A stretch of DNA of 62,960 nucleotides, counting the filler, from Octopus bimaculoides (taxonomy: Eukaryota), in assembly GCF_001194135.2 (NCBI RefSeq). It is 4 parts of 4 records of this genome, joined end to end, with 100 filler letters (N's around TTAATTAATTAA, not from the genome) between each part and the next. Parts side by side here need not be neighbours in the genome. Positions count along the whole stretch, not along the records: positions 29,976 to 61,720 come from NC_069007.1; 3 more parts are not named here. One strand, given 5' to 3'. Of the stretch, positions 6,437 to 61,720 are shown one piece after another. A program made the translations under genes and the position numbers. The number at the start of each line of letters is the position of its first letter. Position 1 is the first letter of the stretch. The notes under the pieces are model-generated. The model searched no databases. It saw nothing but the letters and a program-made list of their open reading frames with translations, and was not told the origin of the DNA.

Positions 6437-7689
6437 TACATATGTATGTATGATTCTGTGAAGTTGAAATCTGGCCTGAAAAGTCATTTACAAAGTCATG
6501 AAAGAGGCTCAAGAAGAAATTCCAAAACAACTTCCTTGAGGATGAGTTGACAACTAATATGCATGTATGTATGTATGTATGTGGGACAAAGAAAATAACT
6601 GAGAAATTATAATGAAGAGAAATCTCATGACAGAGCAAGTATCATAATTTAGAATTTCAAGGCAAACAAAATATTTGGGGCAGTTATTGGTTTAAGAATG
6701 TATAAAAAATAATACCAACCAGAGTGTCAGCTCCACCACCACTACCATCACCATCACTACCTACATGTTGCAAAAATAAATGGTAAAACAAACCTAATAA
6801 ACATAAGAATCAAATCAACAAAATCCATTAGTAAACAAATAACAATGATCTTGTTGATAGTGATGATTTTGCTAGCAAGGATGATTATGATGATGAGGAG
6901 GAGTGGAGGAAGAGAGAGTAGTTGAAGGAGGATGGCAATATTCCTTTTATGTAAGTACCATATTTACTGGCATATAAGACATGCTTCTTTTATTGTCAGA
7001 TGTATAAAAAAAATGCAGCCATATTATGGATGAGAGATTGAGTGTTTTAGGCCAGGAGGCCTAAGCATTAGTCCACAAGGCACAATAATTGTCACTAATA
7101 GTAAATATTGAAAAGCAAGCCAAACTATCACAGTTTATTAGAACAAACTTATGAAAAACTGCTTAAGGTAAAGCAGTTATGTGGGGATTTCACAACATCT
7201 CTTTATAACTCCTTCCCCAGCTTACATAACCCACAACAAATGTGTGTCTTACATTATTTAATGGCTATGTTACCTTTAAGAAACATTTTCTTCTAGAAAG
7301 ATAAAAGTAATGTTTAACTTTCATCTACCTGTCAGTTATTTGTAATGAGTGCATGACAACAAAATTATAGTGATGGTGCACCACCCTTGTGACGGATCAG
7401 AGTAACAAAAACATCATAGCCAAAAATATGAGTTTTACATCATGTAAGGCAACTCTTATAACTAAAATATAAATAAATTTGCAATTGATCTAAAAGAAGA
7501 TAAAGTTGAAATACAGTACTCATATAACGTTGTTTATTTATGATAAGTTTATGGTTACTAATAAGAATGAACTTATTGTATACAGTGCTCAGGTGCACTA
7601 AAACTCATCAGAAAAAGTAACCCAAACTGCATGAACAGTATATAGAATATACACAGGAAGTGAACAGTGAATAAGTCTTTAAAGAAAAA

Positions 7690-31062: not shown

Positions 31063-31532
31063 NNNNNNNNNNNNNNNNNNNNNNNNNNNNNNNNNNNNNN
31101 NNNNNNNNNNNNNNNNNNNNNNNNNNNNNNNNNNNNNNNNNNNNNNNNNNNNNNNNNNNNNNNNNNNNNNNNNNNNNNNNNNNNNNNNNNNNNNNNNNNN
31201 NNNNNNNNNNNNNNNNNNNNNNNNNNNNNNNNNNNNNNNNNNNNNNNNNNNNNNNNNNNNNNNNNNNNNNNNNNNNNNNNNNNNNNNNNNNNNNNNNNNN
31301 NNNNNNNNNNNNNNNNNNNNNNNNNNNNNNNNNNNNNNNNNNNNNNNNNNNNNNNNNNNNNNNNNNNNNNNNNNNNNNNNNNNNNNNNNNNNNNNNNNNN
31401 NNNNNNNNNNNNNNNNNNNNNNNNNNNNNNNNNNNNNNNNNNNNNNNNNNNNNNNNNNATATATATATATATACTAACACACAAACACACTCACAAACAT
31501 GTACACGAAAACACACAAATACACAGACGCAA

Positions 31533-34746: not shown

Positions 34747-35279
34747 NNNNNNNNNNNNNNNNNNNNNNNNNNNNNNNNNNNNNNNNNNNNNNNNNNNNNN
34801 NNNNNNNNNNNNNNNNNNNNNNNNNNNNNNNNNNNNNNNNNNNNNNNNNNNNNNNNNNNNNNNNNNNNNNNNNNNNNNNNNNNNNNNNNNNNNNNNNNNN
34901 NNNNNNNNNNNNNNNNNNNNNNNNNNNNNNNNNNNNNNNNNNNNNNNNNNNNNNNNNNNNNNNNNNNNNNNNNNNNNNNNNNNNNNNNNNNNNNNNNNNN
35001 NNNNNNNNNNNNNNNNNNNNNNNNNNNNNNNNNNNNNNNNNNNNNNNNNNNNNNNNNNNNNNNNNNNNNNNNNNNNNNNNNNNNNNNNNNNNNNNNNNNN
35101 NNNNNNNNNNNNNNNNNNNNNNNNNNNNNNNNNNNNNNNNNNNNNNNNNNNNNNNNNNNNNNNNNNNNNNNNNNNNNNNNNNNNNNNNNNNNNNNNNNNN
35201 NNNNNNNNNNNNNNNNNNNNNNNNNNNNNNNNNNNNNNNNNNNNNNNNNNNNNNNNNNNNNNNNNNNNNNNNNNNNNNN

Positions 35280-36470
35280 GGTGGCGGCAAGGATGCGTAC
35301 TTGCCCCGGTCATCTTCAACTTCTACCTGGCAGCCGTAGCCCTCCACGCCAGGCATTCGTTCAAACTGAAAGATGCAATAACCACCAGGTACCACACAGA
35401 TGGCAGTATTTCCAATCTGAGGTGCCTGAAATCTGTAACAAAGACGTCATCTCAAAACATCTTCGAGTTGCGAGATGCAGATGATACGGCATTCGTCAGC
35501 CATAGCTCTGCTGGCCTTCAAAGGATCTTGGACCATGTATCAGATGCATACAGCAGCAAGACAGAAATCCTCCTACAGCCTTCTGCCCCCGACACCAACC
35601 CATGTTCCTTCCATGTTGAAGATGTGACAATTGCTAATGTTAACCAATTCACGTACCTTGGCTCAGTCCTCAATAACACCCTCAGTCTGACAGACGACAT
35701 TCAGCACCGGACTCGTCTTACCTCTTGCTGCGTTGGATCGGCTAAGTACTCGCGTCCTTCTCAACAAAAAAACATCAACATTAGAACAAAGGTGGCTGTC
35801 TACAATGCTGTTTGTGTTTCAAACCTGCTATGTGGCTGCGAGTCTTGGGTTCCCTACCGGCGTCATATGAAGATGCTCGAACGGTTTCATATCTCTCGTC
35901 TTCAACAACTCCTTGGCTTACACTGGTGGAACAGGAATCCCCCATGTTGAGATACGTGGTCGAACAAAAAGCCAGCCATTGGAGGTAACAATCGCTCACC
36001 GCCAACTCAGATGGACAGGGCATATCATTCGAATGTCTTCAAATCGATTGCTCCCCGCCTTGTTATGTACGACGAACTTGAAGATGGACAACGTTCTGTC
36101 GGTGACCAGCACAAGCGCTTTAAAGATCACCCGAAGGCAACGCTGAAAAAGTGTCACATGTCCATCCCGGCAATCTCGAATCAATGGCTACAGATCGCGG
36201 CGCGACGCATACAAGACTGGCACCACCGAACTCCAAGAAGATCTACTGCGGCGTAAAGTGGCACGCAGCGCCCGGCGGCACGTGCAGAACCCTGGATGTC
36301 AACAGCAGCAAGGCTGTTGACATGCCCCACCTGCGGACATGCCCCACCTGCGGACGTATCTGTCTCTCCAGATTTGGACTTCATACTTATCAGAGGTCAC
36401 ATGACTACAAATGGCGTTTGGGAAAAGCACTCATCTCTCCGCCATGTTCACGGAACGATGATGATGATGA
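35280..36470 (+). mobile_element. RTE-clade LINE, 3' about 1.2 kb, degenerate, (GAT)n tail
   Basis: RQGCVLAPVIFN, (Y)ADDTAFV, FTYLGS, TKVAVYNAVCVSNLLCGCESW, QLRWTGHIIRM, TCPTCGRICLSRFGL. Confidence 0.9.
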
Positions 36471-38239
36471 CTAACCTTCTTCAATCCACAAGAAGCTAGC
36501 ATTCGACTGAATNNNNNNNNNNNNNNNNNNNNNNNNNNNNNNNNNNNNNNNNNNNNNNNNNNNNNNNNNNNNNNNNNNNNNNNNNNNNNNNNNNNNNNNN
36601 NNNNNNNNNNNNNNNNNNNNNNNNNNNNNNNNNNNNNNNNNNNNNNNNNNNNNNNNNNNGGTGGTGGTGGTGGTGGTTGTGTAACAATAAATAAATTTGG
36701 TTTAAATTAATGACTAAATATCTCCATAAATAATTACACAACAGATGATTGATGATGGCGACAGCATTGCTTCTTTTTCTCCTTCTTTTTCTTCTTCTTC
36801 TTCACATTCGACTGCTTATTCTTCATCATTTCCATCACGATCACCACCATCGTCAGCATCATCATCATCATATTCTCCCTCTTTTTCCTTCTTCCTATTG
36901 TTCTCTTTCTCTCTATTGTCTTAATCCGTCTCCGAATCTGATTGATTATTGGAAAAGCGATTTGCAATCATTGAACACCACACCGAAACAAAAAAAACAC
37001 ATGCATACACACTTTCTCTCTCCATCTCCCCCTCTCTCGCCCTCTCCGTCTCTCTATCTCTTTCTCTCTCTTTTTTGTGTGTGTGTTTGTTGAAAATAAT
37101 TGTTTACACAAGGAATATTTTCTTTTATGTCTACAAGATTTAATTCCCATTATTCATAATATATGGATAGGTATATAGATGGATATAGATATGTATGTAT
37201 ACACGTTATATAATAACATACATATATGTAACATATAACACACACACATACACACACTCACATATATATATATACATACTGCATGCATATACATTTGCAT
37301 ATACATACAATATGTATAATGTGTGTATTTATGTATGTATATATTTGTGTATGTATATATATATATCTGTGTGTGTGTCGATGTATATGCATACACGCAC
37401 ACACATTACACAACTGGTTTAACCAGAGTCACAATGGCTTACTCCATCTACCTATATGTACCCGGGTACAGAAATAAACCCCCCACACACACACACACAC
37501 ACACACTTACGTACCTACTCTTCCCCAANNNNNNNNNNNNNNNNNNNNNNNNNNNNNNNNNNNNNNNNNNNNNNNNNNNNNNNNNNNNNNNNNNNNNNNN
37601 NNNNNNNNNNNNNNNNNNNNNNNNNNNNNNNNNNNNNNNNNNNNNNNNNNNNNNNNNNNNNNNNNNNNNNNNNNNNNNNNNNNNNNNNNNNNNNNNNNNN
37701 NNNNNNNNNNNNNNNNNNNNNNNNNNNNNNNNNNNNNNNNNNNNNNNNNNNNNNNNNNNNNNNNNNNNNNNNNNNNNNNNNNNNNNNNNNNNNNNNNNNN
37801 NNNNNNNNNNNNNNNNNNNNNNNNNNNNNNNNNNNNNNNNNNNNNNNNNNNNNNNNNNNNNNNNNNNNNNNNNNNNNNNNNNNNNNNNNNNNNNNNNNNN
37901 NNNNNNNNNNNNNNNNNNNNNNNNNNNNNNTATATACATACATACATACATACATACAGATATTTCTTTGCTTTTAACCCTAAAGGTCTATACGAGATGC
38001 TTTCTCGAGAAGAATATCGCAGTATCATGGCTTTCTTACCGTATATCCACGTTAAGTAAGATGTGTAGATTACTATTTTTTTCACTTGTTTAAGAATGCC
38101 AGGAAGCCCAGAATTTTTTGTAGAAGCCATGAAATAGAGGACCAATCAATTCCTGGAGAAATGGGTCTAATTCGCTGTTTCCTTCCTCCAAAATGTTTGG
38201 TCTTTTACGGTCAGACAGACGTCATTATTTCTATACATC

Positions 38240-39704: not shown

Positions 39705-40147
39705 TGAGTGAGTGTGTGATCGCGTTTGCTAGTTTATGTTCCCGTAACTTAGCGGATCGGTAGTTATATCCGACAAGATAATGATCAGACTTTAAAAATA
39801 AAACATGTGGTGGTGCTCCAGCATGGCCACAAACGAATAACGACCGGAACAAGTAGAGACAAAAGAATGACTTCGCTTCTGTTCATAAATAAAGATTCTC
39901 AGCGAATATATGTTCCAAGGGAAATTATTCTTTGAAGAAATTATCTCCCTTGGTTACTAGTTTATCATGCGTCCGATAACTAAATTAGCTGTATACTGTC
40001 AATTTAATGTGACAGTCCCAATAAGGGAATCATACTGCTGCTATTTAGCCCTAGGAAGCTGAACCGCTTCCTGTTGGCCTTGACACATTTCCTGTGTCCT
40101 TATATTTGCGAGGGGGAGACAAGCACCCCCACCCAGCCTAGTCTGCA

Positions 40148-40190
40148 TTCAGGGACATGTTTCTGAGTCATTGCTCATCATCAGCCTGAA
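40148..40190 (-). ncRNA. Minimal type-I hammerhead ribozyme, family C, all core nucleotides and stems intact
   Basis: Minus strand: TTCAGG CTGATGA TGAG CAATGA CTCA GAAAC AT GTC^CCTGAA. Stem I 6 bp, stem II 4 bp, stem III is the palindrome ACAUGU; cut between 40154 and 40153. Confidence 0.85.
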
Positions 40191-40516
40191 GTAGCAACAC
40201 CAGTTGGCTGAAGATGTCTGTCAACCTCTCGCAAATATAATTTATTTCTAGTGAAAACACATTCACTGATTACAAAAATTAGATTTATAATTAGATCATT
40301 TCATACATACATACATACATATATACATACACACAAATACACACACACACATACATACATACATACATACGTGTATACAAACGGGAGTAAAACTAATGGG
40401 GCGCTAAAGTGTAGATATGTCTTTATCTGTTAATTAAACGTCGGATAACGTTACACACAGAGACGAGAGTTACCTCCCCTACCGCCTTTTTTCCTCTTTT
40501 CATTCATTCATTTTGT

Positions 40517-40526
40517 AAGATGGCGG
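40517..40526 (+). promoter_or_regulatory. YY1-type motif AAGATGGCGG at the probable PMS1 transcription start region
   Basis: Matches YY1 consensus, follows a pyrimidine-rich Inr-like tract, about 70 nt before the ATG. Confidence 0.45.
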
Positions 40527-40587
40527 GAAGCATCGTTATTTTGTAAATCGACCAAACTGTTTCGATGTTTATTGTAAGACGGACACG

Positions 40588-40728
40588 ATGACAACTCTGA
40601 AAGCGCTGCCATCTGATACTATTCGACTTATAGGAAGCACCCAAGTAATAACATCCGTTAGCAATGCTATTAAGGAACTCGTAGAGAATTCCATCGATGC
40701 TGGGGCTACAAATATACAAGTGAAGCTG
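40588..40728 (+). CDS. PMS1: PMS1 coding exon 1
   Basis: MTTLKALPSDTIRLIGSTQVITSVSNAIKELVENSIDAGATNIQVKL|gtacgt; MutL GHKL motif I; phase 0. Confidence 0.95.
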
Positions 40729-41373
40729 GTACGTATTGTACATACGTTGTTTATATATACACGTTGTTTCCTTGTATTGCTATCTACTTTATTACTTTAT
40801 ATACACACGTTGTTCGTATGTACACACGTTGTAATTGTCTTGTACAAGAGAATCGAGCTGGTAATATTTTATGAGTGGAATTCGTTGTGTTTGTATTACA
40901 AAAGTCTTTCGAGTTGAGAATATCCTGCATGGATAACTTATCAAACTTACTTTTGGCATTGTATTTCTCTTGTTTGTTCCTCAAACACACACACACACAC
41001 ACACATATATAGGCAAAACTTCCTTTTGTATCCCCCAAAAAACACCCCCTTTTTTTATTTAATTTTTTTTTTCTACACAAACCCCCGTTTTCGGCTATGG
41101 AGAATACAAATCTGCCCACCTCCACCTCGAGAAATTTTTTTTTTTTTTTTTTTTTACTGAGAGGTCGAATCTGGCTGGTCTGAGCATAGAACAGGTTTCA
41201 AACACTTATTATAGGGCAGGTGTGACCGGCTGGATATGGTCAATCTGTAGTTAAAACAGGTAGATTTTAGCCCGATATAACGAGTTTAAATGCTAACGAG
41301 TTAATGTTCGTACAGAGTTTGTAATTTTTTTGATATTACATCATTTTTTTTTCTTTTTTCCTTTTATACACAG

Positions 41374-43151: not shown

Positions 43152-44460
43152 GTAAACAATAAGAGAAAAAAACAATTGTTTTTAATTTTTTTTTTTTTTT
43201 ACTTGTTTCAGTCATTTGACTGCGGCCATGCTGGAGCACCACCTTTTAGTCGAGCAAATTGACCCCAGGACTTATTCTTTGTAAGCCTAGTACTTATTCT
43301 ATCGAACTGTTTTTGCCGAACTGCTAAGTTACGGGGAACGTACACACACCAGCATCTGATGTCAAGCGATGTTGGTGGGGACAAACACAGACACACACAC
43401 ACACATATATATACACACATATGACAGGCTTCTTTCAGTTTCCGTCTACCAAATCCACTCACAAAGCTTTGGTTGGCCCAAGACTATTATTTCTACAGCT
43501 GAGTTAACTGGAGCAATGTGAAATAAAGTGTCTTGCTCAAGGACACAACACACAGCCTGGTCCAAGAATCAAACTCACTATCTCATGATCGGGAGCCTGA
43601 CACTCTCTCTCTATTTATATATATATATGTATTTATATGTAGATCGTTGCCAGCGCCGCCAGACTGGCTCCCATGCAGGGAGCATGTAAAAACACCTTTT
43701 GAGTGTGGTTGTTGCCAGAACCACCTGACTGGCCCTCGTGCCAGTGGCACATTAAAAGCACCCACTACACTCTCAAAGTGGTTGGCATTAGGAAAGGCAT
43801 CCATCTGTAGAAACTTTGCCAGATCAGATTGGAGCCTGGTGTAGCCATCTGGTTCACCAATCCTCAGTCAAACCGTCCAACCGATGCCAGCATGGAAAGC
43901 GAACGTTAAACTATGATGATGATGTATGTGTATATATATATATGTATATGTGTGTGTGTATATATATGTATATATATATATATATAATGCGAGAGAGTTA
44001 GGGGTTGAGGATTCAACCCACTAAGGGATAGTATCTATCCAATATACTGCTGGGAGGGTACCCAATTATTATTACACTAGTGTTATACCAAGTGCAATAA
44101 TTGGGAGCAGGTAAGGGGGGGGGGGGNNNNNNNNNNNNNNNNNNNNNNNNNNNNNNNNNNNNNNNNNNNNNNNNNNNNNNNNNNNNNNNNNNNNNNNNNN
44201 NNNNNNNNNNNNNNNNNNNNNNNNNNNNNNNNNNNNNNNNNNNNNNNNNNNNNNNNNNNNNNNNNNNNNNNNNNNNNNNNNNNNNNNNNNNNNNNNNNNN
44301 NNNNNNNNNNNNNNNNNNNNNNNNNNNNNNNNNNNNNNNNNNNNNNNNNNNNNNNNNNNNNNNNNNNNNNNNNNNNNNNNNNNNNNNNNNNNNNNNNNNN
44401 NNNNNNNNNNNNNNNNATATATATATATATATATTCACACACACACACATATACATACAT

Positions 44461-49862: not shown

Positions 49863-49989
49863 GTTGGGGCTTTTTTTCATTATTTTTTTAAAACTCGGTG
49901 CTCCAGCATGGCTGCAGTCAAATGACTGAAACAAGTAAAAGAGTATTATTTGCAGACATTTTTATCTCATTATGTACAGTCTCATGGTG

Positions 49990-51179: not shown

Positions 51180-51550
51180 CAGGCATGGCTGTGTGGTTAA
51201 GAAGTTCACTTTCCAACCACATGGTTCCAGGTTCAGTCCCTCTGTGTGGAATCTTAGGCAAGTGTCTTCTATTATAGCCCCAGGCTCACCAAAGCCTTAT
51301 GAGTGGATTTGGTAGACAGAAGCTAAAAGAATTTCATTGTAATAAAAGTGTGTATGTTTGTGTGTCTGTGTTTGTCCACCCACCATCGCTTGACAACCGA
51401 TGCTGGTGTGTTTACGTCCCTGTAACTTAGCGGTTCAGATAGAATAAGTACTAGGCTTACAAAGAAAAAGTCCTGGGGTTGATTTGTTCGATTAAAGGCG
51501 CTGTTCCAGTATGGCGGCTGTCAAATGACTGAAACAAGTAAAAGAATAAA
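51180..51550 (+). mobile_element. SINE family 1, full length
   Basis: Head, central domain and GTCAAATGACTGAAACAAGTAAAAGA tail. Confidence 0.85.
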
Positions 51551-53344: not shown

Positions 53345-53809
53345 CTGGTTAGTTTTTTCTCTTTCTAATTGTACCTTTTAGTTGTTTCACTTTATAATTA
53401 CAAATCCCTACCTGGTTCAAGTTTTGCTAAAACTGAAACGACCCTTTTAAATATTTTAGGTTCAGGCTTTACTAATGATGAAGACGGTTGCATAAAAGTT
53501 TACAATATGCGCAGGTGTGGCTGTGTGGTTAAGAAACTTGCTTCCCAACTATGTGGTCTTTGGTTCAGTCCCACTGGGCAGCACCTTAAGAACATGTCTT
53601 CTATTACAGCCCTGGAAAGACCAGTGTGTTGTGAATAGATGTTCATAGATGGAAACTCAGAGAAGCCCTTTGCATGGCTGTGTGGTAAGACATTTGCTTC
53701 CCAGCCACATGGTTCCAGGTTCAGTCCCACTGCGTGGCACCTTGGGCAAATGATGCTGACCAGAGCCTTGTGAATGGATTTGGTAGACGTGAAGTGACTG
53801 AAGTCATTC

Positions 53810-54140
53810 TTTTTATTCATTTGACTGCGGCCATGCTGCAGCACCGCCTTTTAGTTGAGGGAAATTGACCCCTGGACTTATTCTTCATAAACCTGGCGCT
53901 TATTCTATTGGGCTCTTCTGCCGAACCGCTAAGTTATGAGGACGTAAGCAGGGCAGGGGGGACAGACACAAACACACATATATATGACAGGCTTCTTTCA
54001 GTTTCCATCTACCAAATCCACTCACAAGGCCTTGCTCATTCCAGGGCTATAATAGAAGACATTTGCCCAAGGTGCCACACAGTGGGACTGAACCTGGAAC
54101 CATGTGATTGGGAAGCAAGCTTCTTACCACACAGCCACAT
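53810..54140 (-). mobile_element. SINE family 1
   Basis: Reverse complement of family 1 tail, central domain and head. Confidence 0.8.
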
Positions 54141-61399: not shown

Positions 61400-61720
61400 T
61401 CTTTTACTTGTTTCAGTCATTTGACTGCGGCCATGCTGGAGCACCGCCTTTTTAGTCTAATCAAATCGACCCCCCCCTAGTACTTATTCTATCGTTCTCT
61501 TTAGCCGAACCGCTAAGTTACGGGGACGTAAACACACCAGCATCGGTTGTCAAGCGATGTTGGGGGGACAAACACAGACACACAAACATACACACACACA
61601 TGCATATATATATATATATATATATACATATATATTATACGACGGCTTCTTTCAGTTTCCGTCTACCAAATCCACTCGTAGGGCTTTGGTCGGCCCGAGG
61701 CTATAGTAGAAGACACTTGC
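61400..61720 (-). mobile_element. SINE family 1, truncated by scaffold end
   Basis: Tail and central domain close to consensus. Confidence 0.85.

What the first reader, a model, noticed from the sequence alone, without database searches (positions are those of the whole stretch)
39910..40240. Intact hammerhead ribozyme in a long hairpin, antisense just upstream of PMS1
Seen: perfect minimal hammerhead at 40148-40190 (-). Its stem I is prolonged by CAGCC/GGCTG and a 15/16 inverted repeat (40100-40115 with 40225-40240), giving a roughly 140-nt rod. More small hairpins follow 3' of the cut (GACACA/TGTGTC, GGAAGC/GCTTCC, CTGTCA/TGACAG, CCAAGGGA/TCCCTTGG). No PLE ORF is nearby. It lies about 330 nt from the putative PMS1 start region. 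Inference: either a retrozyme-like structured non-autonomous RNA element, or an exapted ribozyme that clips the divergent promoter-upstream transcript of a DNA-repair gene.
Basis: partly seen in the sequence, partly recalled or inferred. Interest (0 to 1): 0.85.

Follow-up and report, generated by a model that had tools for sequence, protein, structure and literature searches.

The report
Solo hammerhead-ribozyme repeat unit upstream of PMS1
A genuine animal-type hammerhead self-cleaving RNA motif sits in a roughly 280-base, highly folded, non-coding insertion just upstream of an octopus DNA-repair gene; it looks like a stray single copy of a known kind of ribozyme-carrying mobile element, not a regulator of that gene.

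Summary
On the minus strand, 40190-40148 has every invariant hammerhead core base, cutting between 40154 and 40153, and sits at the tip of a 141-nt hairpin (40240-40100; -63 kcal/mol, z -5.9).

It is not chance. It carries the peripheral signature of canonical animal type I hammerheads: GCUAC bulge, 6-bp helix I, 4-bp helix II, CAAUGA loop. Relatives from metagenome contigs covary in all 10 helix I and II pairs.

"Perfect" overstates it:
- Helix III is one pair plus a palindromic CAUG loop, the dimer-dependent type.
- Pair 10.1-11.1 is U-A, not G-C.
- Rfam scores it below threshold (HH9 28.5 bits against 52).

The motif lies in a 280-bp structured unit (39996-40275, GC 45%) bracketed by a 12/14 direct repeat and next to a microsatellite. 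The unit is missing from the orthologous PMS1 upstream region of Octopus vulgaris, and no related hammerhead turns up in the Argonauta hians locus.

Best reading: a solo unit of a non-LTR retrozyme-like (Penelope-related) hammerhead retroelement, able at most to nick a transcript slowly. Exaptation at the PMS1 promoter is not supported. Copy number could not be measured. It is a new member of a known kind, of modest interest.

The parts
39996..40275 (-). The 280-bp structured non-coding unit, the putative solo hammerhead retroelement. It consists of a leader hairpin, a rod with the hammerhead at its tip, and three small hairpins.
   Evidence: The minus strand folds at -107.9 kcal/mol, z -6.19. 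GC is 44.6% against 38.9% for the piece. The unit has no counterpart in the orthologous O. vulgaris interval. It has no other copy in the piece.
40100..40240 (-). A 141-nt rod, which is helix I of the hammerhead prolonged by about 50 further base pairs.
   Evidence: The fold is -63.2 kcal/mol, z -5.9. The terminal inverted repeat is 15/16. There are 23 AU, 23 GC and 6 GU pairs.
40148..40190 (-). Type I hammerhead motif. Helix I 5' strand 40190-40185; CUGAUGA 40184-40178; helix II UGAG/CUCA 40177-40174 and 40167-40164 with loop CAAUGA 40173-40168; GAAA 40163-40160; CAUG 40159-40156; U16.1 40155; C17 40154; helix I 3' strand 40153-40148.
   Evidence: Read directly from the sequence. It is the only hit of my descriptor scan. 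The HH9 model scores 28.5 bits over its full length. Relatives covary in helices I and II.
40153..40154 (-). Predicted self-cleavage site: C17 (40154), cut, then C1.1 (40153).
   Evidence: The position follows from the hammerhead consensus. Cleavage was not tested.
40191..40193 (-). UAC bulge on the 5' strand of helix I (loop 1), paired in the family with a single U (40147) on the 3' strand.
   Evidence: GCUAC ... UGC is identical in the closest relatives and in the HH9 consensus.
40247..40269 (-). Leader hairpin (AUCAGUGA ... UCACUAG).
   Evidence: It appears in the minimum-free-energy and centroid folds.
40082..40098 (-). Hairpin A, GACACA/UGUGUC.
   Evidence: Seen in the folds.
40054..40071 (-). 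Hairpin B, GGAAGC/GCUUCC.
   Evidence: Seen in the folds.
39996..40015 (-). Hairpin C, CUGUCA/UGACAG. It abuts the lower direct repeat.
   Evidence: Seen in the folds.
40276..40289 (.). Direct repeat copy AAATTAGATTTATA. It is either a target-site duplication or a terminal redundancy.
   Evidence: It matches the other copy at 12 of 14 positions, 294 bp away.
39982..39995 (.). Direct repeat copy AAATTAGCTGTATA. It lies where homology to O. vulgaris ends.
   Evidence: Repeat found. Alignments.

Best explanation
This is a single, unit-length copy (about 280-294 bp) of a hammerhead-bearing non-autonomous retroelement. It is of the kind described in animals as non-LTR retrozymes, which are thought to derive from the pseudo-LTRs of Penelope-like elements. 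It was most likely gained in this octopus lineage after the split from O. vulgaris, though loss in O. vulgaris is not excluded. It lies in fast-turnover, microsatellite-rich DNA about 350-400 bp upstream of PMS1.

Shown:
- The ribozyme is a canonical animal type I hammerhead.
- Its helix I is prolonged into a 141-nt rod.
- The rest of the unit forms four small hairpins.

Inferred, how such a family works:
- In a tandem array, each transcript is cut at C17 in successive units.
- The released monomer re-forms the split ribozyme through the long helix I.
- That brings the 5'-OH and 2',3'-cyclic phosphate ends together for ligation into a small circular RNA.
- The circle is then the template for reverse transcription.

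Inferred, what happens at this locus:
- Helix III is one base pair plus the palindrome ACAUGU, so efficient cleavage would need two ribozymes pairing through that palindrome.
- There is one ribozyme and one cut site here, so no monomer or circle can be released.
- Any minus-strand transcript would at most be nicked slowly, and the halves would stay held by the rod.
- The copy is most likely a neutral passenger whose core happens to be intact.
For: The hammerhead is genuine:
- All core bases are present.
- A chance motif is expected 0.0015-0.003 times per 30 kb.
- The peripheral signature GCUAC / 6 bp / CUGAUGA / 4 bp / CAAUGA / 4 bp / GAAAC ... U-GC matches the HH9 model over its full length.
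- It also matches hammerheads in metagenome contigs of animal origin.
- In a 14-sequence alignment, all 6 inner helix I pairs and all 4 helix II pairs change on both sides. Pairing is 95% against 65% in shuffles and 30-41% when partners are slid.

The helix III is of the dimer type:
- ACAUGU is a palindrome, as in relatives (ACACGUGU, ACGCGCGU, ACAGCUGU).
- PMC7229834 and PMC6155905 report that such newt and axolotl hammerheads cleave poorly as monomers and well as dimers.

The unit has retrozyme-like properties:
- It is 280 bp with GC 44.6% and z -6.2. PMC7229834 gives about 170-400 nt, low GC and a highly self-paired structure.
- A permuted circular fold keeps the rod at -103.9 kcal/mol.
- Solo monomers of such families are reported in 10.64898/2026.07.22.740005.

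It looks like an insertion:
- A 12/14 direct repeat brackets the unit.
- The repeat coincides with the end of homology to O. vulgaris.
- Syntenic anchors on both sides align at 82-88%, while the unit itself is missing.
- A covariance model of the ribozyme finds nothing in the O. vulgaris or Argonauta PMS1 loci.
- The unit sits next to a (TATG)n/(TG)n microsatellite, and PLE-type integration is biased to microsatellites (PMC8557442).
- Hammerhead_1 matches are already reported in a cephalopod genome: 235 in the giant squid (PMC6962438).
Against: - No second copy was found, whether tandem, dispersed or degenerate. The search covered 31.7 kb of this genome, 37.6 kb of O. vulgaris and 31.3 kb of Argonauta.
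- A translated search against 1.84 billion proteins gave nothing real.
- The family's existence in octopods is therefore inferred, not shown. The source genome was not searchable.
- The empty-site alignment is inconclusive, 102 against 100. Direct repeats of 12-15 nt at 80-92% identity are common in this AT-rich stretch, with four families in 581 bp.
- O. vulgaris has 2.6 kb of other repeats at the site, so loss there cannot be excluded.
- The rod folds nearly as well on the plus strand: -54.6 against -62.5 kcal/mol, with 5 against 6 GU pairs. RNA-level selection on the minus strand is therefore weakly supported.
- No RT/GIY-YIG ORF is nearby.
- PLE hammerheads are usually described as lacking the tertiary-contact loops (PMC6155905), which this one has.
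Confidence: 0.62

Rival explanations
1. It is an exapted, lineage-specific ribozyme. Divergent (upstream antisense) transcription from the CpG-rich PMS1 promoter runs through the rod. The hammerhead cleaves the transcript at 40154/40153, giving an unprotected 5'-OH fragment that is degraded. This would limit antisense RNA or insulate the promoter.
For: - The core is fully intact and the rod is 15/16 at its base.
- Orientation and position fit a promoter-upstream transcript, antisense and 350-400 nt from the ATG.
- No second copy was found in 100 kb of octopod DNA, so a single-copy status is not excluded.
- Domesticated type I hammerheads exist in amniotes (HH9, HH10), and HH9 is the best Rfam match.
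Against: - It is absent from the orthologous O. vulgaris interval, and no related hammerhead was found in the Argonauta locus.
- Conservation with O. vulgaris begins only at 40386, after the microsatellite.
- Helix III is the dimer-dependent type and 10.1-11.1 is U-A, so poor activity is predicted for a lone copy (PMC7229834).
- The long helix I would keep the products annealed.
- No minus-strand gene or transcript evidence is available. No gene is called within 10 kb upstream in O. vulgaris.
Confidence: 0.07
2. It is the 5' module of a composite SINE-like element, comparable to the Schistosoma Sm-alpha element. The hammerhead unit, the 39875-39985 segment, the SINE body (39724-39874) and its (CA)n tail would all be one minus-strand retroposon.
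For: All parts are collinear on the minus strand, and a microsatellite tail follows at 39720-39646. Sm-alpha shows that hammerheads can be part of SINE-like retroposons (PMC6155905).
Against: - The O. vulgaris orthologue has the 39737-39985 part without the hammerhead unit.
- The five or more other SINE copies in the piece match only 39724-39874.
- A direct repeat brackets the 280-bp unit alone.
Confidence: 0.06
3. It is a chance hammerhead-like loop at the tip of an unrelated DNA palindrome, such as a foldback or MITE-like element or an inverted duplication.
For: - The rod folds on both strands with similar z-scores and GU counts.
- A genome of this size should hold a hundred or more chance minimal motifs, at 0.05-0.1 per Mb.
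- Rfam does not call it at gathering score.
Against: - The peripheral signature is shared base for base with real hammerheads whose helices covary: UAC bulge at the exact register, 6-bp and 4-bp helices, CAAUGA loop, U-GC.
- The bare pattern occurs only 39 times in 241 million metagenome records, and about six of those hits have two or fewer of the four helix II pairs, so look like chance.
- No clear TA or TTA duplication flanks the rod beyond the palindrome itself.
Confidence: 0.04
4. It is an ancestral element lost from O. vulgaris rather than gained here. It could be an old, decaying remnant of a once tandem array, of which one unit survives.
For: The O. vulgaris interval is 2.6 kb of unrelated tandem tRNA-like repeats and microsatellite, so replacement is possible. 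The empty-site alignment is inconclusive.
Against: An old remnant would not be expected to keep every core base and a 15/16 rod base. No degenerate neighbouring units are present. No related hammerhead turns up in the Argonauta locus, although its upstream DNA was not aligned.
Confidence: 0.12

Closest known systems
Non-LTR retrozymes of animals (Cervera and de la Pena 2020, PMC7229834), including newt and axolotl satellite 2 and mussel and coral repeats
   Same: Both have a type I hammerhead with loop 1 and loop 2 contact motifs. Both have a very weak helix III, a single pair capped by a palindromic tetraloop, as in axolotl HHR_Amex1. Unit size is about 300 bp, GC is low, and the RNA is strongly self-paired. 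Helix I is closed by the rest of the molecule.
   Different: Here there is one unit with one ribozyme, not a tandem array. No other copies have been shown. Pair 10.1-11.1 is U-A. Expression and circular RNA are unknown.
Penelope-like element pseudo-LTR hammerheads (Cervera and de la Pena 2014; Lunse et al. 2017; PMC8557442)
   Same: Both have a minimal or absent helix III with dimer-type cleavage. Both are associated with microsatellite targets. A 2026 preprint (10.64898/2026.07.22.740005) proposes these elements as the source of animal retrozymes.
   Different: No RT/GIY-YIG ORF lies within 31.7 kb. PLE hammerheads are usually described as lacking the peripheral tertiary-contact loops, which this one has.
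Rfam Hammerhead_HH9 (RF02275), the conserved intronic hammerhead of amniotes
   Same: It is the best Rfam match and aligns over the full length. It shares the outer helix, UAC bulge, 6-bp helix I, 4-bp helix II and a 6-nt loop starting CAA. It is a single-copy genomic setting near or in a gene.
   Different: The score is 28.5 bits against a gathering score of 52. HH9 has a stable helix III, is intronic and in sense orientation, and is conserved across species. This motif is intergenic and antisense-upstream, and no copy was found at either of the two other octopod PMS1 loci examined.
Schistosoma Sm-alpha hammerhead (SINE-like retroposon)
   Same: From my memory of the crystallised construct, it has a UAC-containing bulge 6 bp from the core, a 4-bp helix II and the loop CAAAUA, against CAAUGA here. 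It is carried by a short non-autonomous retroposon.
   Different: Sm-alpha has a longer helix III and thousands of copies. No sequence homology outside the ribozyme was tested.
Solitary type I hammerhead in metagenome contigs of animal origin (L010 and five identical-locus ENA contigs)
   Same: The unpaired parts are identical (GCUAC, CUGAUGA, CAAUGA, GAAAC, UGUC, UGC), with compensated helices. It scores 33.5 bits with the octopus model. It is apparently a lone copy, lying 1.4 kb from an ORF that encodes an ETS domain.
   Different: It has no long rod. Its helix III loop is CUG rather than a palindrome. It has G10.1-C11.1. The host is unknown, and none of the metagenome contigs shares an octopod repeat.

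Membership tests
Hammerhead ribozyme, type I (structural definition) | Invariant core: C3 U4 G5 A6 N7 G8 A9, G12 A13 A14, A15.1-U16.1, and H17 not G | tested here: met
   CUGAUGA, GAAA, U16.1 and C17 were read at 40184-40154. It is the only hit of the descriptor scan.
Hammerhead ribozyme, type I (structural definition) | Three helices around the core, with helix I open and helices II and III closed | tested here: met
   Helix I has 6 bp plus the rod, and helix II has 4 bp with a 6-nt loop. Helices I and II covary with relatives.
Hammerhead ribozyme, type I (structural definition) | A helix III stable enough for monomeric folding | tested here: not met
   There is only A15.1-U16.1 plus the palindromic tetraloop CAUG. 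This is the dimer-dependent kind (PMC7229834, PMC6155905).
Hammerhead ribozyme, type I (structural definition) | Loop 1 and loop 2 tertiary-contact motifs | tested here: met
   The UAC bulge and CAAUGA loop are in the same register as the HH9 consensus and the metagenome relatives. This was judged by sequence only.
Hammerhead ribozyme, type I (structural definition) | Self-cleavage | not testable with these tools
   It needs in vitro transcription of monomer and dimer constructs.
Rfam hammerhead families (clan CL00010) | Score at or above the family gathering threshold | tested here: not met
   There was no match at gathering score. HH9 scores 28.5 against 52.
Non-LTR retrozyme | Tandem repeat with a type I hammerhead in at least two consecutive units | tested here: not met
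   There is a single unit and a single ribozyme, with no tandem or degenerate neighbour.
Non-LTR retrozyme | Unit of about 170-400 nt, low GC, highly self-paired | tested here: met
   The unit is 280 bp (294 between the repeats), GC 44.6%, z -6.19.
Non-LTR retrozyme | Multiple copies in the genome | tested here: inconclusive
   No copy was found in about 100 kb of octopod DNA. That only excludes very high copy numbers, and the source genome could not be searched.
Non-LTR retrozyme | Expressed as linear and circular RNA | not testable with these tools
   No transcript data are available.
Penelope-like element | ORF with RT and GIY-YIG endonuclease, flanked by pseudo-LTRs | tested here: not met
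   No such ORF of 110 aa or more is in the piece. The only RT-like ORF is a weak LINE-like RVT_1 fragment, E 0.0017.
Domesticated genomic hammerhead (HH9/HH10 type) | Conserved at the orthologous locus across species | tested here: not met
   The unit is absent from the orthologous O. vulgaris interval, and the model finds no related hammerhead in the Argonauta hians PMS1 locus.
MITE or foldback DNA element | Terminal inverted repeats with a target-site duplication, and many copies | tested here: inconclusive
   The rod ends are inverted repeats (15/16). No duplication is distinguishable from the palindrome, and no other copies were seen.

The most novel reading that the evidence does not exclude
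It is a single-copy, recently domesticated canonical hammerhead at a bidirectional DNA-repair-gene promoter. It would cleave the upstream antisense transcript of PMS1 in one octopus lineage. That would be an invertebrate counterpart of the amniote HH9/HH10 ribozymes, and the first ribozyme tied to the processing of promoter-upstream RNA.
Probability: 0.05. Interest if true: 0.7.

Novelty: new member of a known kind. Interest (0 to 1): 0.3.

Why it matters
Hammerhead ribozymes in cephalopods have so far appeared only as Rfam match counts (235 in the giant squid, PMC6962438). No element has been described. This locus gives a concrete, well-delimited unit: ribozyme, rod, accessory hairpins and bracketing repeat. 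It can serve as a seed to ask whether octopods carry retrozyme families that make small circular RNAs, and whether these travel with Penelope-like elements.

For PMS1 itself the finding is probably incidental. The element lies outside the conserved promoter block and is not shared with O. vulgaris.

Tried and rejected
1. An Rfam scan of the piece at gathering score and of 1 kb at E<=10 found no hammerhead. The mir-297, mir-1277 and similar hits at 40300-40388 are microsatellite artefacts.
2. Exact look-ups of two window ORFs, the 35-aa ORF inside the element and the 109-aa exon-1 read-through, found nothing on record.
3. The first protein search, with a 101-aa query, returned only short proteins and no cephalopod. 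A full-length exon model was needed.
4. The exact 31-mer of the ribozyme was not found in viral contigs. The pattern with free helix II was not found in metagenome contigs.
5. The 52-aa translation of the element was searched against 1.84 billion representatives. It gave two hits, a bacterial repeat protein and a translated tandem repeat, both spurious.
6. ORFs of 130 aa or more in the O. vulgaris and Argonauta loci showed no Penelope-like ORF that could seed a search for octopod PLEs.
7. An empty-site reconstruction, with the unit and one repeat copy excised, aligned to O. vulgaris barely better than the full allele, 102 against 100. It is not decisive.
8. GU asymmetry between strands, tested as a sign of RNA-level selection, was 6 against 5 pairs and is uninformative.
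9. ORMDL1, the human divergent neighbour of PMS1, was searched against the whole piece and was not found.
10. I noticed a resemblance of GGTTCAGCTTCC (hairpin B) to a pol III B box. I did not pursue it because the register does not fit a T-arm.

Full report
**What is there**

On the minus strand, 40190-40148 reads UUCAGG CUGAUGA UGAG CAAUGA CUCA GAAA CAUG U C / CCUGAA. This is a type I hammerhead, with helix I open. Every invariant core base is present. The predicted cut is after C17, between 40154 and 40153.

Helix I continues outward. After a UAC bulge on the 5' strand and a single U on the 3' strand, it runs through about 50 more pairs to a 15/16 inverted repeat at 40240-40225 and 40115-40100. 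The 151-nt stretch folds as one hairpin at -63.2 kcal/mol, z -5.9.

Downstream on the same strand are three small hairpins (40098-40082, 40071-40054, 40015-39996). Upstream is a leader hairpin (40269-40247).

**Is it more than chance?**

- A descriptor scan of my own asked for CUGANGA, helix II of at least 3 bp, GAAA, helix III of at least 2 pairs counting 15.1-16.1, H17 not G, and helix I of at least 5 bp. It finds only this motif in the 31.7-kb piece and none in 37.6 kb of O. vulgaris.
- In 20 Mb of sequence simulated with the piece's dinucleotide composition, the rate is 0.05-0.1 per Mb. That is 0.0015-0.003 per 30 kb, but a hundred or more per octopus-sized genome. The core alone therefore does not settle it.
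- The periphery does. When only 91 nt are searched, Rfam's Hammerhead_HH9 model aligns over its full length at 28.5 bits, E 7e-6, against a gathering score of 52. It shows the same outer helix, UAC bulge, 6-bp helix I, 4-bp helix II and 6-nt loop beginning CAA.
- A pattern that fixes only the unpaired bases (TAC-N6-CTGATGA-N4-CAAWKA-N4-GAAAC) occurs in just 39 of 241 million metagenome records. In 31 of the 39 hits helix II is fully paired, and 15 also have a perfect 6-bp helix I.
- A covariance model of the octopus motif picks up 20 of them.
- The closest relative is a locus recovered in six ENA assemblies, 1.4 kb from an ETS-domain ORF and therefore from an animal genome. It reads UCGCUAC ACAGUG CUGAUGA GUUC CAAUGA GGAC GAAAC UG UC CACUGU UGCGA. 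Every unpaired segment is identical and both helices are compensated.
- In the 14-sequence alignment, all six inner helix I pairs and all four helix II pairs change on both sides. Pairing is 95% against 65% in shuffles and 30-41% when partners are slid. The alignment was fitted to the model, which favours the structure. However, the sequences were selected without any pairing requirement.

I conclude that this is a real descendant of the canonical animal type I hammerhead.

**How intact is it?**

- The core is intact. Helix III is not a helix in any useful sense. A15.1-U16.1 is followed by C-G, which would close a 2-nt loop, so in effect it is one pair capped by CAUG.
- ACAUGU is a palindrome. 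Most relatives also have palindromic helix III segments: ACACGUGU, ACGCGCGU, ACAACGUUGU, ACAGCUGU.
- This is the arrangement described for newt and axolotl satellite hammerheads. Those cleave poorly as single motifs and efficiently when two copies form a joint, elongated helix III (PMC7229834, PMC6155905).
- The 10.1-11.1 pair is U-A, while 12 of 13 distinct relatives have G-C. From general knowledge of hammerhead mutagenesis this should lower the rate further. I did not test that.
- Rfam does not report the motif at curated thresholds.

**The unit and its boundaries**

- A direct repeat brackets a 280-bp stretch, 39996-40275: AAATTAGCTGTATA at 39982-39995 and AAATTAGATTTATA at 40276-40289. 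It matches at 12 of 14 positions, 294 bp apart.
- That stretch has GC 44.6% and folds at -107.9 kcal/mol, z -6.19.
- Folded as a circle permuted to start at the cut site, it keeps the rod plus a branched domain at -103.9 kcal/mol.
- These values fit what is reported for animal non-LTR retrozymes: about 170-400 nt, low GC and highly self-paired (PMC7229834).
- The long helix I extension is what a type I hammerhead in such an RNA needs. After cleavage in a tandem transcript, it brings the two halves of the split ribozyme, and so the two ends, together for ligation.
- The plus strand folds almost as well: -95.1 kcal/mol, z -5.97, with 5 against 6 GU pairs in the rod. The structure alone therefore does not tell the strand. 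The ribozyme does.

**Genomic context**

- PMS1 is on the plus strand. Exon 1 starts at ATG 40588, and exons run to about 53240.
- The Octopus vulgaris orthologue and its 10-kb upstream region were fetched as L001. The Argonauta hians locus was fetched as L002.
- The window is not O. vulgaris, since alignable non-coding DNA is 82-88% identical.
- Synteny is clear. Window 38000-39130 matches L001 4616-5934. Window 40386-41146, the promoter and exon 1, matches L001 9814-10580.
- Between these anchors, window 39737-39985 matches L001 6959-7189 at 68%. This covers a SINE-like repeat plus a unique segment that includes the CCAAGGGA hairpin. That hairpin is therefore old flanking DNA, not part of the element.
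- The 280-bp unit has no counterpart. O. vulgaris has 2.6 kb of other material there, including a 184-bp tandem tRNA-like repeat, microsatellite and another SINE copy.
- Homology ends within a few bases of the lower direct repeat. Excising the unit improves the alignment only from 100 to 102, so the empty site is not demonstrated.
- The ribozyme model finds nothing else in the window, L001 or L002, 130 kb in all.
- The unit sits 10-25 bp from a (TATG)n/(TG)n microsatellite. Penelope-like elements are reported to favour microsatellite targets (PMC8557442), but microsatellites are everywhere in this piece.
- No RT/GIY-YIG ORF is present. The only RT-like ORF, near 35.3-35.9 kb on the plus strand, is a weak RVT_1 match with an ADD motif, which I read as LINE-like.

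**Interpretation**

The best-supported reading is a solo unit of a hammerhead-bearing non-autonomous retroelement, retrozyme-like and probably Penelope-related. A 2026 preprint reports solo monomers of such families and derives them from PLE pseudo-LTRs (10.64898/2026.07.22.740005).

- Shown: the ribozyme's class, the unit's structure, and its absence from the O. vulgaris orthologous site.
- Inferred: that a family exists in this genome, that the direct repeat is a target duplication, and that the copy is functionally inert.

With one ribozyme, no unit-length RNA can be released. With a dimer-type helix III, cleavage of a lone copy should be slow. The rod would also hold the products together.

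The exaptation idea is not supported. The element lies outside the block conserved with O. vulgaris, which starts at 40386, and no copy was found at either of the two other octopod PMS1 loci. It cannot be formally excluded for this lineage, because copy number and transcription could not be examined.

**Limits**

The source genome could not be searched. Only about 100 kb of octopod DNA was available, which excludes only very high copy numbers. No transcript data were available. The comparison with the Schistosoma ribozyme sequence rests on my memory of the crystallised construct.

**Verdict**

- The retrozyme-like reading is favoured and the exaptation reading is unsupported.
- This is a new member of a known kind, of modest interest.

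Noticed in passing
window 39724-39874 (minus strand); other copies at 43188-43345, 53800-53947, 61405-61533, 49897-49937 and 51410-51436: A SINE-like dispersed repeat (core GGCCATGCTGGAGCACCACC) ends in a (CA)n/(CACT)n tail at 39720-39646. It has at least five further copies in the piece and many in the O. vulgaris locus. The copy next to the hammerhead unit is orthologous in O. vulgaris (L001 6959-7189).
   Followed up: partly
window 39915-39953: The hairpin CCAAGGGAAATTATT / AATTATCTCCCTTGG is conserved, with its pairing, in O. vulgaris (L001 about 7100-7160).
   Followed up: partly
L001 7381-7791 (O. vulgaris): A tandem array of period about 184 bp, made of a tRNA-like repeat (GTTCAAATTCCGCC box), sits where the window has the hammerhead unit. 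Further copies lie at L001 14557-14783 and 27894-28851.
   Followed up: no
window 35280-35950 (+): This is a reverse-transcriptase fragment (WRQGCVLAP ... DADD). It gives a weak RVT_1 match, is LINE-like, and is cut by an assembly gap. It is unrelated to the hammerhead unit.
   Followed up: partly
window 40300-40388: A (TATG)n/(TG)n microsatellite gives spurious sub-threshold Rfam matches to mir-297, mir-1277, mir-4012 and mir-3149.
   Followed up: yes
window 40386-40587: This CpG-containing block upstream of the PMS1 ATG is 82% identical to O. vulgaris and begins exactly where the microsatellite ends. It is probably the core promoter and 5'UTR.
   Followed up: no
window 31063-31458, 34747-35279, 36513-36659, 37529-37930 and 44127-44416: Five runs of N, which are assembly gaps, lie mostly next to microsatellites. 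The source is a draft assembly.
   Followed up: no
L031 785-837 and 2139-2191: A metagenome contig carries two copies of a related type I hammerhead (helix III palindrome ACGCGCGU) inside a 1354-bp tandem repeat. That is a larger tandem hammerhead unit than the roughly 300 bp usual for retrozymes.
   Followed up: partly
L010 2455-2508, and the same locus in L012, L016, L018, L030 and L039: The closest relative of the octopus ribozyme is an apparently solitary copy 1.4 kb from an ORF that encodes an ETS domain. It was recovered in six ENA assemblies. The host animal was not identified.
   Followed up: partly
L002 3212-4876 (-), Argonauta hians: An intact 554-aa multi-C2H2 zinc-finger ORF lies divergently upstream of PMS1. 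It is not among the called genes of that locus, and no counterpart was seen in the window.
   Followed up: no
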